DNA of 64,000 nt from Glycera tridactyla (Eukaryota), in assembly GCA_965644265.1 (NCBI GenBank), contig OZ286472.1, forward strand, positions 44,888,001-44,952,000. Direction: 5' to 3'. The first letter of the stretch is position 1. Each line of letters opens with the position of its first letter. The notes under the pieces were generated by a model. It was not told where the DNA came from. It saw only the letters and a list, made by a program, of their open reading frames with translations, and searched no databases. This document shows, piece after piece, positions 60,141-61,357 of the stretch. The translations under genes were made by a program, and so were the position numbers.

Positions 60141-60654
60141 CATTCTTGTTCGTGTCTGCGTATTCGATGCCGTTCTACTCACTTTCCACCCACTGTGGCA
60201 TACTCTCATACTCGCCTTCGTCCCTTCAACCTTGCCGCTCTCAACTTTTCACAATTACATTCACACCTTATCCCATATTTTCCATTTGAAGGTCAATTCA
60301 GTAGCATCAACGTTCCAATCATACAGTTCATACTCGCATATGATGTCATCATGGTTCACTAGACTCATCCCCCAGTCCAACCCCCCCGTAGGTGTTGTTT
60401 CACATTCTGCTCCGCTGGCGATGACCTTGGTCGACATTGGGTGATGTTTCATCTCAACTACAGTCAACATCATTTTGATGAGTACATACCAGGCCTTGAT
60501 ACAGTTATGTTGACGTTATTTAGCCATCTTCGTTCATTTCATTCAACAACCGAGGGTAAAGAGGTCGTATTGGTTTCTATCGCCGTCTTGGTCCAATTCA
60601 CAAGCTGTTTCATTCGTATGGACATTTGCTGTGCTGCAGTACAAGGAGGAGAGT

Positions 60655-61357
60655 TTATGTCGCCATCATGGTCCCATGTCACACTCCTCCATGTTTCTGC
60701 TTCCGGTTATGTACGGGTACCCTTCATCGGCTGAAGTATGTATCGAGCTTATGTCGCCATCATGGTCCCATATCACTCAGTACCATACCCCTTGTCACAT
60801 CCCTCCATGTTTCTGTTACCGGTTATGTACGGCTTCCCTTCATCGGTAGAAGTATGTATCGAGCTTATGTCGCCATCATGGTCCCATATCACTCAATACA
60901 TGAGACCTGCTAGGTGTAATGTTAATACTTCAACGCAGTAGGGGAAGGTTCACTCAGGGAGGATGCAGCGTTGCAATACTGGGAGGGGGGTTTATGTCGC
61001 CATCATGGTCCCATATCGCACCCCTCCTTGTTTTTTATGGTCTTGCATGAATACCCACTTATCTGTGAACGTTATTGCTAGTTGCTCCTAATAATACTTT
61101 ATGTCGTCATCGTTGATACATTGAGACCAGAGGGGGTTGAATTCACCGGAAAGGAGTTTATGTCGCCATCATGGTCCCATTTCACTCCATCCCTGCATAC
61201 GTAACTGGCTGCTTAGGAGCACATATTCTCTTGATGGAAGTTGCGTCGGTCACTCTTATTGTTCATAATAATACTTTATGTCGTCATCGTTGATACATTG
61301 AGACCAGAGGGGGTTGAATTCACCGGAAAGGAGTTTATGTCGCCATCATGGTCCCAT
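60655..61357 (-). repeat. Array of six identical 23-mers TTATGTCGCCATCATGGTCCCAT with 71-154-nt spacers
   Basis: Copies start at 60655, 60749, 60865, 60992, 61158, 61335; extra degenerate copies near 60578, 61102, 61279. Confidence 0.95.

What the first reader, a model, noticed from the sequence alone, without database searches (positions are those of the whole stretch)
60578..61357. Repeat-spacer array of a perfect 23-mer, each copy encoding a micro-ORF M-M-A-T-stop
Seen: six identical 23-mers with spacers of 71, 93, 104, 143 and 154 nt, partly unique and partly duplicated. In element sense each reads ATGGGACC ATG ATG GCG ACA TAA. Two degenerate copies (61102, 61279) still read ATG ACG ACA TAA, and the distant 58277 copy reads ATG GCG ACA TGA, so start and stop appear retained. 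The second ATG has A at -3 and G at +4, and the motif contains the palindrome CCAT-N-ATGG. Known: UGGGA is the 18S rRNA-pairing core of calicivirus TURBS reinitiation signals; short uORFs drive ribosome shunting in pararetroviruses; ATGGCG is the YY1 core. Inference: a translational relay (reinitiation or shunt) or a multimerised transcription-factor site controlling RT expression across the long spacer.
Basis: partly seen in the sequence, partly recalled or inferred. Interest (0 to 1): 0.8.

Follow-up and report, generated by a model that had tools for sequence, protein, structure and literature searches.

The report
Hairpin array between LINE reading frames
The repeated 23-mer is the conserved tip of a small hairpin, present about ten times in the long spacer between the esterase gene and the reverse-transcriptase gene of an intact LINE retrotransposon; a related LINE family has a comparable array built from a different hairpin, so this is probably a cis-acting signal of the element and not a set of micro-genes.

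Summary
There are six perfect 23-mers at the stated places, none expected by chance. Four diverged copies lie at 60578, 58277, 58017 and 57935. All ten are on the + strand.

Context: the array sits on the minus strand inside one LINE. The order is ORF1a, an SGNH-esterase ORF1b, a 3.7 kb spacer, then an intact APE+RT ORF2.

In 8-9 of 10 copies the 19-nt core caps a hairpin, and the outer stem has a different but still complementary sequence in each copy.

A related family (ORF2 39 %, ORF1b 30 %, ORF1a 38 % identical) has the same gene order. Its spacer carries 8 copies of an unrelated 22-nt hairpin with compensatory changes in 5 of 6 pairs. That hairpin contains no ATG and no GCCAT.

The micro-ORF is absent or altered in 3 of the 4 diverged copies. 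The spacer holds 133 sense ATGs. The array lies downstream of the stop codon and 2.9-3.7 kb from the ORF2 start. A reinitiation or shunt relay is therefore not supported.

One diverged copy matches the validated YY1 site of mouse L1 Tf monomers 12/12, so a YY1-type reading stays a live rival.

Best reading: a multivalent hairpin platform on the element's RNA. This mechanism is inferred, not shown.

The parts
62284..64000 (-). ORF1a. Its 5' end runs off the window. It has a heptad-rich N-terminal part, an ORF1-type middle domain, then a Q-rich and R/RGG-rich tail.
   Evidence: Residues matching 63501-63067 are 38 % identical (E 1e-28) to ORF-A of the related element L039. No Pfam or PDB sequence hit.
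61382..62287 (-). ORF1b, 301 aa, an SGNH/GDSL esterase-like protein. It overlaps the end of ORF1a by 4 nt in another frame.
   Evidence: Weak Pfam SGNH and Lipase_GDSL_2 hits. 75 relatives. The profile hits GDSL esterases in the PDB. AlphaFold model pLDDT 89.8. Foldseek top hits are PAF-AH Ib and GDSL lipases, E about 1e-5.
57672..61381 (-). Inter-ORF spacer, 3710 nt, holding the two hairpin clusters plus unrelated tandem repeats and low-complexity tracts.
61317..61377 (.). Hairpin copy c6 (perfect 23-mer 61335-61357), 26 nt downstream of the ORF1b stop in element sense.
61140..61200 (.). Hairpin copy c5 (perfect 23-mer 61158-61180).
60974..61034 (.). Hairpin copy c4 (perfect 23-mer 60992-61014). 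Purine/pyrimidine stem, a variant of the c1 stem with paired changes.
60847..60907 (.). Hairpin copy c3 (perfect 23-mer 60865-60887).
60731..60791 (.). Hairpin copy c2 (perfect 23-mer 60749-60771). A 22-nt stretch next to the motif, absent from the c1 unit, supplies the 3' arm of its stem.
60637..60697 (.). Hairpin copy c1 (perfect 23-mer 60655-60677). Strongest stem.
   Evidence: (z -3.8).
60557..60617 (.). Degenerate copy p0 (core 60578-60596, 3 mismatches). No flanking stem and no ATG.
58256..58316 (.). Distal copy d3 (core 58277-58295, 1 mismatch).
57996..58056 (.). Distal copy d2 (core 58017-58035). Good hairpin. Positions 58018-58029 equal the mouse L1 Tf YY1 site.
   Evidence: (p 0.0005).
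57914..57974 (.). Distal copy d1 (core 57935-57953), 264 nt before the ORF2 ATG. The hairpin is kept, there is no ATG, and the GCCAT core is broken.
61082..61435 (.). Youngest tandem duplication, two 177-nt units. It includes the last ~45 nt of ORF1b coding sequence and two half copies of the motif (about 61099-61120 and 61276-61297).
   Evidence: (D5, D10).
58425..60140 (.). Middle of the spacer: other tandem repeats (58425-58745, 58762-59073, 59256-59385), (GT)19 and a CT-rich tract. No motif copies and no consistent hairpins.
54738..57671 (-). ORF2, 977 aa, uninterrupted. AP-endonuclease plus reverse transcriptase.
   Evidence: Pfam Exo_endo_phos and RVT_1. PDB hits to R2 and LINE-1 ORF2p. 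39 % identity over 956 aa to ORF2 of L039.
54443..54737 (-). 3' untranslated region up to the first masked run.

Best explanation
What it is. The 23-mer is the apex of a small hairpin module: variable outer stem, then a short internal loop, then a 3-4 bp inner stem, then a 3-nt loop. About ten such modules, all in one orientation, lie in two clusters in the spacer between the esterase ORF and ORF2 of an intact esterase-type LINE. One cluster begins 26 nt after the ORF1b stop. The other ends 264 nt before the ORF2 start.

How it probably works. A related LINE family keeps the same layout with a different hairpin. I therefore read the array as a cis-acting signal of the element that works in single-stranded nucleic acid, most likely the full-length sense RNA. 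I propose that it is a multivalent docking platform for a protein, most plausibly one of the element's own. ORF1a has an ORF1-type domain and an arginine/RGG-rich tail. The platform would help assemble the ribonucleoprotein on the RNA that encoded the protein, and/or help ORF2 to be expressed across a spacer that scanning ribosomes could hardly cross.

Shown versus inferred. Shown: the repeats, the constraint on the core, the stems that differ between copies yet stay complementary, the membership in one element, and the parallel array in a relative. Inferred: that the active form is RNA, which strand it is, which protein binds, and what the effect is.
For: Constraint. The 23-mer is identical in six units whose flanks are only 30-78 % identical.

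Hairpin.
- The MFE of 8-9 of 10 copies puts the core at the tip of a hairpin, on either strand, with different stem sequences.
- With a fixed structure on an ungapped alignment, 73.5 % of cells pair, against 36-44 % when the partner is slid and 62 % when shuffled (0/500). Twelve pairs have changes on both sides.
- Flanks of random genomic positions placed around the same core rarely do as well (per-copy p from 0.0005 to 0.33).
- Chimeras of a left flank with a right flank from another family pair less well (mean E -12.8 kcal/mol and 6.9 flank-flank pairs; cognate copies other than p0, with the same perfect core, -13.3 to -25.8 and 8-14 pairs).
- Five of the 9 substitutions in the four diverged cores fall in the 3-nt apical loop.
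- Other tandem repeats in the same spacer show no such hairpins.

One element. The youngest duplication includes the end of ORF1b. The homologous element L039/L043/L044 has the same order of three homologous proteins.

Lineage trait.
- The L039 spacer has 8 copies of an unrelated 22-nt hairpin, found nowhere else in that contig.
- In those copies 100 % of 48 cells pair, 5 of 6 pairs show compensatory changes, 0/500 shuffles do as well, and two U.G pairs exist only in the sense strand.
- The copies again form two clusters, the last ending 225 nt before ORF2.
- L040, another relative, shows two copies of a third motif just after its esterase-like ORF.

Literature. The authors of the LINE esterase structure already speculated that esterase-type ORF1 proteins bind structured RNA through arginine-rich peptides (PMC3905857).
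Against: - No other copy of this family could be fetched. Conservation is therefore judged only within one array and by analogy with a 39 %-identical relative.
- The strand cannot be decided here. Outer stems have 10 wobble-only pairs on each strand. One diverged copy favours each strand. The local hairpins survive a 901-nt fold better on the + strand, which is antisense.
- Per-copy folding z-scores are modest, and two perfect copies (c5, c6) fold no better than shuffles.
- The whole array is not more stable than shuffled sequence (z -0.6 and +0.3).
- Template switching at quasi-palindromes can create complementary flanks without selection.
- No binding protein is identified.
- The exact YY1-site match is left unexplained by this reading.
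Confidence: 0.45

Rival explanations
1. Multimerised transcription-factor site acting at the DNA level. Each unit would carry a YY1-type site, as in the tandem promoter monomers of mouse L1. The array would act as an internal promoter or enhancer, for instance giving ORF2 its own transcript or driving antisense transcription.
For: - Copy d2 contains, at 12 of 12 positions, the sequence shown by reporter and gel-shift assays to be the YY1 site of the Tf monomer. The six perfect copies match at 11 of 12. Eight of 10 copies keep the GCCAT core (PMC11602158).
- Tandem units with a conserved box and drifting flanks are how mouse L1 promoters look (abstracts).
- The distal cluster lies 264-630 nt upstream of the ORF2 ATG.
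Against: - The array lies between ORF1b and ORF2, not at the 5' end.
- Conservation extends 7-8 nt beyond the 12-nt site (GGTCCCA is invariant in 9 of 10 copies).
- Copies d1 and p0 break the 5-nt core, which abolishes binding in that paper, yet keep the rest of the motif; d1 also keeps the hairpin.
- The six perfect copies change one of the two thymidines that the paper finds important.
- Stems that change sequence but stay complementary are not expected for a protein that reads double-stranded DNA.
- The related family's hairpins have no GCCAT.
- No ATG-free leader follows the distal cluster.
Confidence: 0.2
2. Modular translation signal for ORF2 at the RNA level. The repeated hairpins would recruit ribosomes or initiation factors internally, as an IRES-like enhancer that possibly pairs with ribosomal RNA, so that ORF2 is made from the bicistronic RNA despite the long spacer.
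For: - The spacer cannot plausibly be scanned: 133 ATGs, and 20 uORFs of 30 codons or more.
- In both families the last hairpin ends 225-264 nt before the ORF2 ATG, followed by an A-rich, G-poor leader.
- Mouse L1 has an IRES upstream of ORF2 that binds host proteins (PMC3592465, abstract).
Against: - Most copies lie near the ORF1b stop, 2.9-3.7 kb from the ORF2 ATG.
- The motif differs completely between families, which argues against pairing to a conserved ribosomal RNA site.
- Complementarity to the host's 18S rRNA could not be tested because no host rRNA sequence is at hand.
- Nothing here bears on translation directly.
Confidence: 0.12
3. First reader's model. Each copy is a translated micro-ORF (M-M-A-T) that relays ribosomes by reinitiation or shunting from ORF1 to ORF2.
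For: - The six perfect copies carry ATGs in good context followed by a stop after 3-4 codons.
- Sense ATGs are about twice as frequent in the spacer as base composition predicts (133 against 64).
Against: - Only 1 of the 4 diverged full copies keeps both start and stop, whereas all keep the core and two or three keep the hairpin.
- An overlapping M-G-P-stop ORF starts earlier in the same motif.
- The related family's hairpins contain no ATG.
- Twenty uORFs of 30 codons or more lie in the way.
- TURBS-type signals lie upstream of the stop, with the restart within about 20-30 nt (PMC10275272).
- From general knowledge of pararetrovirus shunting, the short ORF ends just before the base of a large stem. 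Here it sits at the tip of a small one.
Confidence: 0.04
4. No function. This would be a minisatellite that grew by unequal exchange or reverse-transcriptase slippage. The quasi-palindromic core would provoke template switching that copies one flank onto the other, and gene conversion would keep the cores alike.
For: - The units are clearly local duplications of different ages. One includes the end of ORF1b.
- The core is a quasi-palindrome.
- The rest of the spacer is full of ordinary tandem and simple repeats.
- The c2 stem arm arose as a 22-nt stretch beside the core that the sister c1 unit lacks.
Against: - Conversion limited to exactly 19-23 nt in six units whose flanks differ by 22-70 % is hard to picture.
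- Substitutions in diverged copies avoid the paired positions.
- A 39 %-identical family keeps an array of different hairpins in the same place, with compensatory changes.
- That family's spacer is 99.8-99.9 % identical in contigs from three samples, i.e. part of a young, probably active element.
- Neighbouring repeats in the same spacer have no hairpins.
Confidence: 0.12

Closest known systems
Tandem promoter monomers of mouse LINE-1 (Tf type) with their YY1 site
   Same: Both are tandem units inside a LINE with one short box held constant while the flanks drift. The box sequence is identical at 12/12 positions in one copy and 11/12 in six (PMC11602158).
   Different: The mouse monomers lie at the 5' end upstream of ORF1, are about 200 bp and regular, and act as double-stranded DNA. 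Here the units lie between ORF1b and ORF2 and are 94-177 nt and irregular. The conserved block is longer than the YY1 site. Each unit also forms a hairpin whose stem differs between copies yet stays complementary.
Esterase-type (type IV ORF1) non-LTR retrotransposons of the CR1/L2/RTEX groups, e.g. zebrafish ZfL2-1
   Same: Both have an APE+RT ORF2 and an SGNH-esterase domain encoded upstream, preceded by a coiled-coil-like region and basic stretches (PMC3905857, PMC4120745).
   Different: In those elements the esterase is part of a single ORF1 and no long inter-ORF spacer or hairpin array is described. Here the esterase is a separate frame after an ORF1-type domain, and the ORF2 relatives are only 25-41 % identical. 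The clade was not assigned.
Arrays of protein-binding RNA hairpins with a constant tip and free stems (phage boxB with the N peptide, coat-protein packaging signals of small RNA viruses)
   Same: The pattern is the same: loop and internal-loop bases are fixed, stems vary but stay paired, and several copies are spread along one RNA. The literature suggests arginine-rich peptides for esterase-type ORF1 proteins (PMC3905857).
   Different: No binding partner is known here and no sequence relation exists. The likeness is one of design only and rests on general knowledge, not on a test.
IRES upstream of ORF2 in mouse LINE-1
   Same: It is also an inter-ORF RNA region of a LINE that binds proteins and allows ORF2 translation (PMC3592465).
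   Different: The mouse region is short and A-rich and is not built of repeated hairpins.
Calicivirus-type TURBS reinitiation signal
   Different: A TURBS lies upstream of the first ORF's stop and needs the restart codon within about 20-30 nt (PMC10275272). Here the array lies after the stop and kilobases from ORF2.

Membership tests
APE-type non-LTR retrotransposon (LINE) | ORF2 with an AP-endonuclease domain followed by a reverse-transcriptase domain | tested here: met
   Pfam Exo_endo_phos (39-253) and RVT_1 (532-783, E 7e-39). PDB hits to R2 and LINE-1 ORF2p.
Esterase-type (type IV ORF1) LINE | SGNH/GDSL esterase domain encoded upstream of ORF2 | tested here: met
   Sub-threshold Pfam hits. 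Pfam GDSL in 4 of 21 relatives. Profile hits to GDSL esterases. Confident model with SGNH-hydrolase fold matches. The catalytic His/Asp of block V was not checked.
Esterase-type (type IV ORF1) LINE | Esterase preceded by a coiled coil within one ORF1 protein | tested here: inconclusive
   The heptad-like region in ORF1a was seen by eye only. The esterase is in a different frame and overlaps ORF1a by 4 nt. In relative L039 the two are also separate ORFs.
Esterase-type (type IV ORF1) LINE | Placement of the RT in the CR1, L2 or RTEX clade | not testable with these tools
   No library of named LINE reference elements is available. The best relatives are unnamed.
Mouse-L1-type promoter monomer array | Tandem monomers at the 5' end, upstream of ORF1 | tested here: not met
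   The array lies downstream of the ORF1b stop and upstream of ORF2.
Mouse-L1-type promoter monomer array | Intact YY1 core (GCCAT) with flanking bases in each monomer | tested here: inconclusive
   Eight of 10 copies keep GCCAT. One copy matches the validated site 12/12 and six match 11/12. Two copies break the core.
Mouse-L1-type promoter monomer array | Promoter activity and YY1 occupancy | not testable with these tools
   No expression or chromatin data are available.
TURBS termination-reinitiation signal | Element located upstream of the stop codon of the first ORF | tested here: not met
   All copies lie 26 nt or more downstream of the ORF1b stop. Criterion from PMC10275272.
TURBS termination-reinitiation signal | Stop and restart codons within about 20-30 nt | tested here: not met
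   The distance from the ORF1b stop to the ORF2 ATG is 3710 nt.
TURBS termination-reinitiation signal | Complementarity to host 18S rRNA | not tested
   The letters quoted in the finding are from memory and were not used. No host rRNA sequence is at hand.
uORF-dependent ribosome shunt (pararetrovirus type) | A short ORF is conserved and ends just upstream of the base of a large stable stem | tested here: not met
   The micro-ORF lies in the tip of each small hairpin and is lost in 3 of the 4 diverged copies. The criterion comes from general knowledge.
Protein-binding RNA hairpin array (design class, not a homologous family) | Constant apex, with stems that vary but stay paired, in several copies | tested here: met
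   for the window. for relative L039.
Protein-binding RNA hairpin array (design class, not a homologous family) | A cognate binding protein | not testable with these tools
   None identified. ORF1a's basic tail is only a candidate.
CRISPR-type repeat-spacer array (suggested by the finding's title) | Regular repeats with unique spacers of uniform length beside cas genes in a prokaryote | tested here: not met
   Spacers are 71-154 nt and partly duplicated. The locus is inside a LINE in a eukaryote-like sequence with microsatellites and no large prokaryotic ORFs.

The most novel reading that the evidence does not exclude
A lineage of esterase-type LINEs may carry, between the esterase ORF and ORF2, an array of family-specific hairpins. 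These would act as the element's own recognition signals. As multivalent docking sites they would let its ORF1-type protein, or ORF2 protein, seize the RNA that encoded it, giving a sequence-specific basis for cis-preference. The same sites might also enable ORF2 expression. Such an inter-ORF 'packaging-signal' array has, as far as my searches reach, not been described for any non-LTR retrotransposon.
Probability: 0.3. Interest if true: 0.7.

Novelty: new variant of a known kind. Interest (0 to 1): 0.55.

Why it matters
How LINE proteins recognise their own RNA, and how ORF2 is made from a bicistronic RNA, is known for very few elements, almost all of them mammalian L1. An array of sequence-specific hairpins placed between the two genes, kept in layout but replaced in sequence between related families, would be a tractable handle on both questions in the large, little-studied esterase-type LINEs. 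It also gives annotators a signature for telling a genuine long inter-ORF spacer from a nested insertion. If it proves to be only a YY1-type site cluster, it would still show that the promoter logic of mouse L1 arose independently in a distant LINE.

Tried and rejected
- Other copies of the family. None was found in the window (blastn, tblastn and covariance model). ORF2 is not on record in the gene index.
- Metagenome scan. The 19-mer scan of metagenome contigs gave 34 single hits, which is about what I estimated chance alone would give for 18 specified bases in a collection of that size. No array was found.
- Rfam. No family matched in 54-64 kb apart from one sub-threshold snoRNA hit. There are no tRNAs.
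- Word-index protein search. It found nothing for ORF1b or for the ORF1a middle domain. Only the exhaustive search found ORF1b relatives.
- Strand assignment. G.U asymmetry was balanced, 10 against 10.
- Whole-array folding. The array is no more stable than shuffles.
- Cross-searches. The window's hairpin model finds nothing in the relatives, and the relatives' model finds nothing in the window. The spacers of the two families are not alignable.
- Motif matches to the 3' UTR or elsewhere in the element. Only scattered 9-mers, at a level I would expect by chance (no shuffle control was run).
- ATG-free leader after the distal cluster. Not present.
- Organism names for the assemblies and runs holding the relatives. 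Not found in the paper library.
- A CRISPR-like reading of 'repeat-spacer array' was rejected.
- Other transcription-factor likenesses that came to mind were not pursued, because there is no motif library here.
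Full report
OBSERVATION

The six identical 23-mers are real. They start at 60655, 60749, 60865, 60992, 61158 and 61335 on the + strand, with none expected by chance. The spacers are 71, 93, 104, 143 and 154 nt. A 19-nt core allowing three mismatches occurs ten times, always on the + strand and only between 57935 and 61356 (0.04 expected). 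The four extra copies are at 60578 (p0), 58277 (d3), 58017 (d2) and 57935 (d1). Nothing similar lies elsewhere in the window.

The units are local duplications of different ages:
- c5/c6: 177-nt units, 94-98 % identical.
- c2/c3: 116-nt units, 91 % identical.
- c1/c4: 83 % identical over 70 nt.

Outside the motif, ungapped flank identity is 63-78 % within these pairs and 30-45 % between them, yet all 23 motif positions are identical in all six.

CONTEXT

The array lies on the minus strand of the window inside a non-LTR retrotransposon. In element sense the order is as follows.
- ORF1a, from 64000 (and beyond the window) down to 62284.
- ORF1b, 62287 down to 61382, 301 aa.
- A 3710-nt spacer.
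- ORF2, 57671 down to 54738, 977 aa and uninterrupted, with AP-endonuclease and RT domains.

ORF1b is an SGNH-type esterase-like protein. The evidence is two sub-threshold Pfam hits, 75 relatives in the exhaustive search, GDSL Pfam hits in four of 21 relatives, weak profile hits to GDSL esterases in the PDB, and a confident model (pLDDT 89.8) whose best fold matches are PAF-acetylhydrolase Ib and GDSL lipases. Esterase-bearing ORF1 proteins are known from CR1, L2 and RTEX LINEs (PMC3905857, PMC4120745).

No stops or frameshifts are demonstrable in the element's genes. ORF1a and ORF1b are two frames overlapping by 4 nt, and they are also separate ORFs in the relative described below.

The youngest tandem unit of the array includes the last ~45 nt of ORF1b (D10). 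The array therefore grew in place and belongs to the same element.

The flanks of each copy are inverted repeats of each other, and they differ from copy to copy.
- Folding 83-nt pieces puts the core at the tip of a hairpin in 8 of 10 copies, on either strand. With 20-nt flanks the count is 8 of 10, and a ninth (d3) forms the hairpin when given the perfect core.
- On an ungapped alignment centred on the motif, one fixed structure pairs 73.5 % of cells. This compares with 36-44 % when the 3' partner is slid by 1-3 columns and 62 % after shuffling (0 of 500 as high). Twelve of 20 pairs change on both sides.
- Random genomic flanks placed around the same core seldom fold as well (p from 0.0005 for d2 to 0.33 for c2). 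Chimeras of left and right flanks from different unit types pair less well.
- There are about five independent stem sequences: c1/c4 with c5/c6 distantly alike, c2/c3, d1, d2 and d3.
- In the c2 unit a 22-nt stretch next to the motif, absent from the sister c1 unit, provides the new 3' arm.
- Five of the nine substitutions in the four diverged cores fall in the three apical-loop positions.
- Other tandem repeats in the same spacer show no consistent hairpin. This serves as an internal control.

Caveats:
- Per-copy z-scores are modest, and c5 and c6 fold no better than shuffles.
- The 901-nt array as a whole is no more stable than shuffled sequence.
- The strand cannot be told. Wobble-only pairs are 10 on each strand, and one diverged copy favours each strand.
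- The local hairpins persist better in the long + strand fold. In the sense fold some copies pair with each other, because the apex is self-complementary.

A RELATED FAMILY

The ORF1b relatives led to contig L039 (GCA_029979705.1), and to L043 (GCA_013332675.1) and L044 (a Logan run). These carry, in order:
- ORF-A, whose residues 482-627 are 38 % identical to ORF1a (E 1e-28).
- ORF-B, whose first 300 residues are 30 % identical to ORF1b (E 8e-33).
- A 1094-nt spacer.
- An ORF2 that is 39 % identical over 956 residues.
- An (AAT)n tail.

The three spacers are 99.8-99.9 % identical. The spacer is thus an integral part of a young family and not a nested insertion.

The spacer holds eight copies of a 22-nt motif unrelated to the window's. 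In sense this motif folds as a 3-bp stem, a 2x2 purine-rich internal loop, a 3-bp stem and a hexaloop. All 48 cells pair, five of six pairs show compensatory changes, and no shuffle in 500 does as well. Two U.G pairs exist only on the sense strand. A covariance model of it finds the eight copies and nothing else, in that contig or in the window. The window's model finds nothing in the relatives.

The layout is parallel in the two families. Each has two clusters, and the last hairpin ends 225 nt (L039) or 264 nt (window) before the ORF2 ATG. In both an A-rich, G-poor stretch follows, although the sequences are not alignable. A third relative, L040, shows two copies of yet another ~22-nt motif within 250 nt after its esterase-like ORF. 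A more distant relative, L036 (31 % in ORF2), has only 65 nt between its upstream ORF and ORF2, so the long spacer is not universal.

THE MICRO-ORF AND REINITIATION IDEA

The six perfect copies do read M-M-A-T-stop, with an overlapping M-G-P-stop that starts earlier. The evidence against a relay is as follows.
- Among the diverged copies, d1 and p0 have no ATG, d2 reads on for 18 codons, and only d3 keeps a start and stop. All four keep the core, and d1 and d2 keep good hairpins.
- The relatives' hairpins contain no ATG at all.
- The spacer has 133 sense ATGs against 64 expected, and 20 uORFs of 30 codons or more, the longest 134.
- No ATG-free leader precedes ORF2.
- According to a recent review, TURBS elements lie upstream of the first ORF's stop, and all known cases have stop and restart within 20 nt (PMC10275272). 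Here the array follows the stop and is 2.9-3.7 kb from the ORF2 ATG.

I did not use the letters that the finding quotes for that signal. I could not test rRNA complementarity because no host rRNA is at hand.

THE YY1 IDEA

This lead is better than the finding suggests. The paper that validated the YY1 site of the mouse L1 Tf monomer prints a 12-mer (PMC11602158). That 12-mer occurs exactly at 58018-58029 in copy d2. The six perfect copies differ at one position, one of two thymidines the authors found important.

Against YY1 as the whole story:
- d1 and p0 break the 5-nt core, and a single change there abolished binding in that study.
- Conservation extends 7-8 nt beyond the site.
- A protein that reads double-stranded DNA does not explain stems that change sequence yet stay complementary.
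- The array is not at the 5' end.
- The relatives' hairpins have no such core.

I keep it as the main rival.

MECHANISM

Shown: a constrained core, stems that differ between copies but stay complementary, one element, and a parallel array in a relative.

Inferred: the modules act in single-stranded nucleic acid, most likely the full-length sense RNA by analogy with the sense-only wobble pairs of L039. There they would serve as repeated docking sites for a protein.

The complete replacement of the motif between families that keep the layout fits a partner that evolves with the element better than a conserved host factor. ORF1a has an ORF1-type middle domain and an arginine/RGG-rich tail. The authors of the LINE esterase structure speculated that such proteins bind structured RNA through arginine-rich peptides (PMC3905857). 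A cluster that begins 26 nt after the ORF1b stop would be well placed for capture of the RNA by freshly made protein. The cluster near ORF2 could bear on ORF2 expression.

I put about 0.8 on 'hairpin array that is a trait of this LINE lineage' and about 0.45 on the docking-platform mechanism.

NOVELTY

My paper searches found no description of inter-ORF hairpin arrays in LINEs. The library is partial, so this is weak evidence. I rate the finding as a new variant of a known kind, namely a cis-acting signal of a LINE.

LIMITS AND A SLIP

The source organism is unknown, and the relatives' assemblies could not be named. Masked N runs were left as they are.

None was entered into a tool or used as evidence. 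The YY1 comparison rests only on the string printed in PMC11602158.

Noticed in passing
window 44192-45546 (-): A second reverse-transcriptase remnant (Pfam RVT_1, E 4e-10 on ORF 45004-45546), unrelated to the element studied. It gave no tblastn match to that element's ORF2.
   Followed up: partly
window 52605-54442: Four masked N runs directly 3' of the element's 3' UTR are interspersed with a TCTATCCATCTATCTG-like microsatellite. This is possibly the element's 3' tail or a host microsatellite. The runs were not filled or looked up.
   Followed up: no
window 58425-60140: The middle of the spacer is made of other tandem repeats (82/163-nt, 194-nt and 63-nt units), (GT)19 and a 340-nt CT-rich tract. 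The 58.5-58.9 kb repeats have no consistent hairpin.
   Followed up: partly
window 62284-62965 (-): The C-terminal third of ORF1a is a glutamine-rich then arginine/RGG-rich low-complexity tail just before the esterase frame. It is a candidate RNA-binding peptide.
   Followed up: no
window 60655-61357, apex of each copy: The apex is self-complementary (8 of 9 positions). Copies can therefore pair with each other instead of folding locally. This happens in the 901-nt sense-strand fold and could matter for RNA-RNA contacts.
   Followed up: partly
L001:1-248: The contig holding the closest ORF2 relative (41 %) starts with a 124-nt-arm, 97 % perfect palindrome, probably an assembly artefact. It contains a 9-mer shared with the motif about 130 nt upstream of ORF2, which is marginal (about 0.04 by chance).
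   Followed up: partly
L040:1140-1245: Two copies of a third, unrelated ~22-nt motif, about 72 nt apart, lie just downstream of an esterase-like ORF (30 % to ORF1b). The contig is too short to see more.
   Followed up: partly
L039:3061-5415: In the related family the esterase-like ORF continues for about 480 further residues with no Pfam match. The window's ORF1b stops after the esterase domain.
   Followed up: no
L036:415-1500: A more distant relative (ORF2 31 %) has an ORF1 with a Baculo_FP_2nd domain hit and only 65 nt between its upstream ORF and ORF2. The long spacer is therefore specific to part of the lineage.
   Followed up: partly
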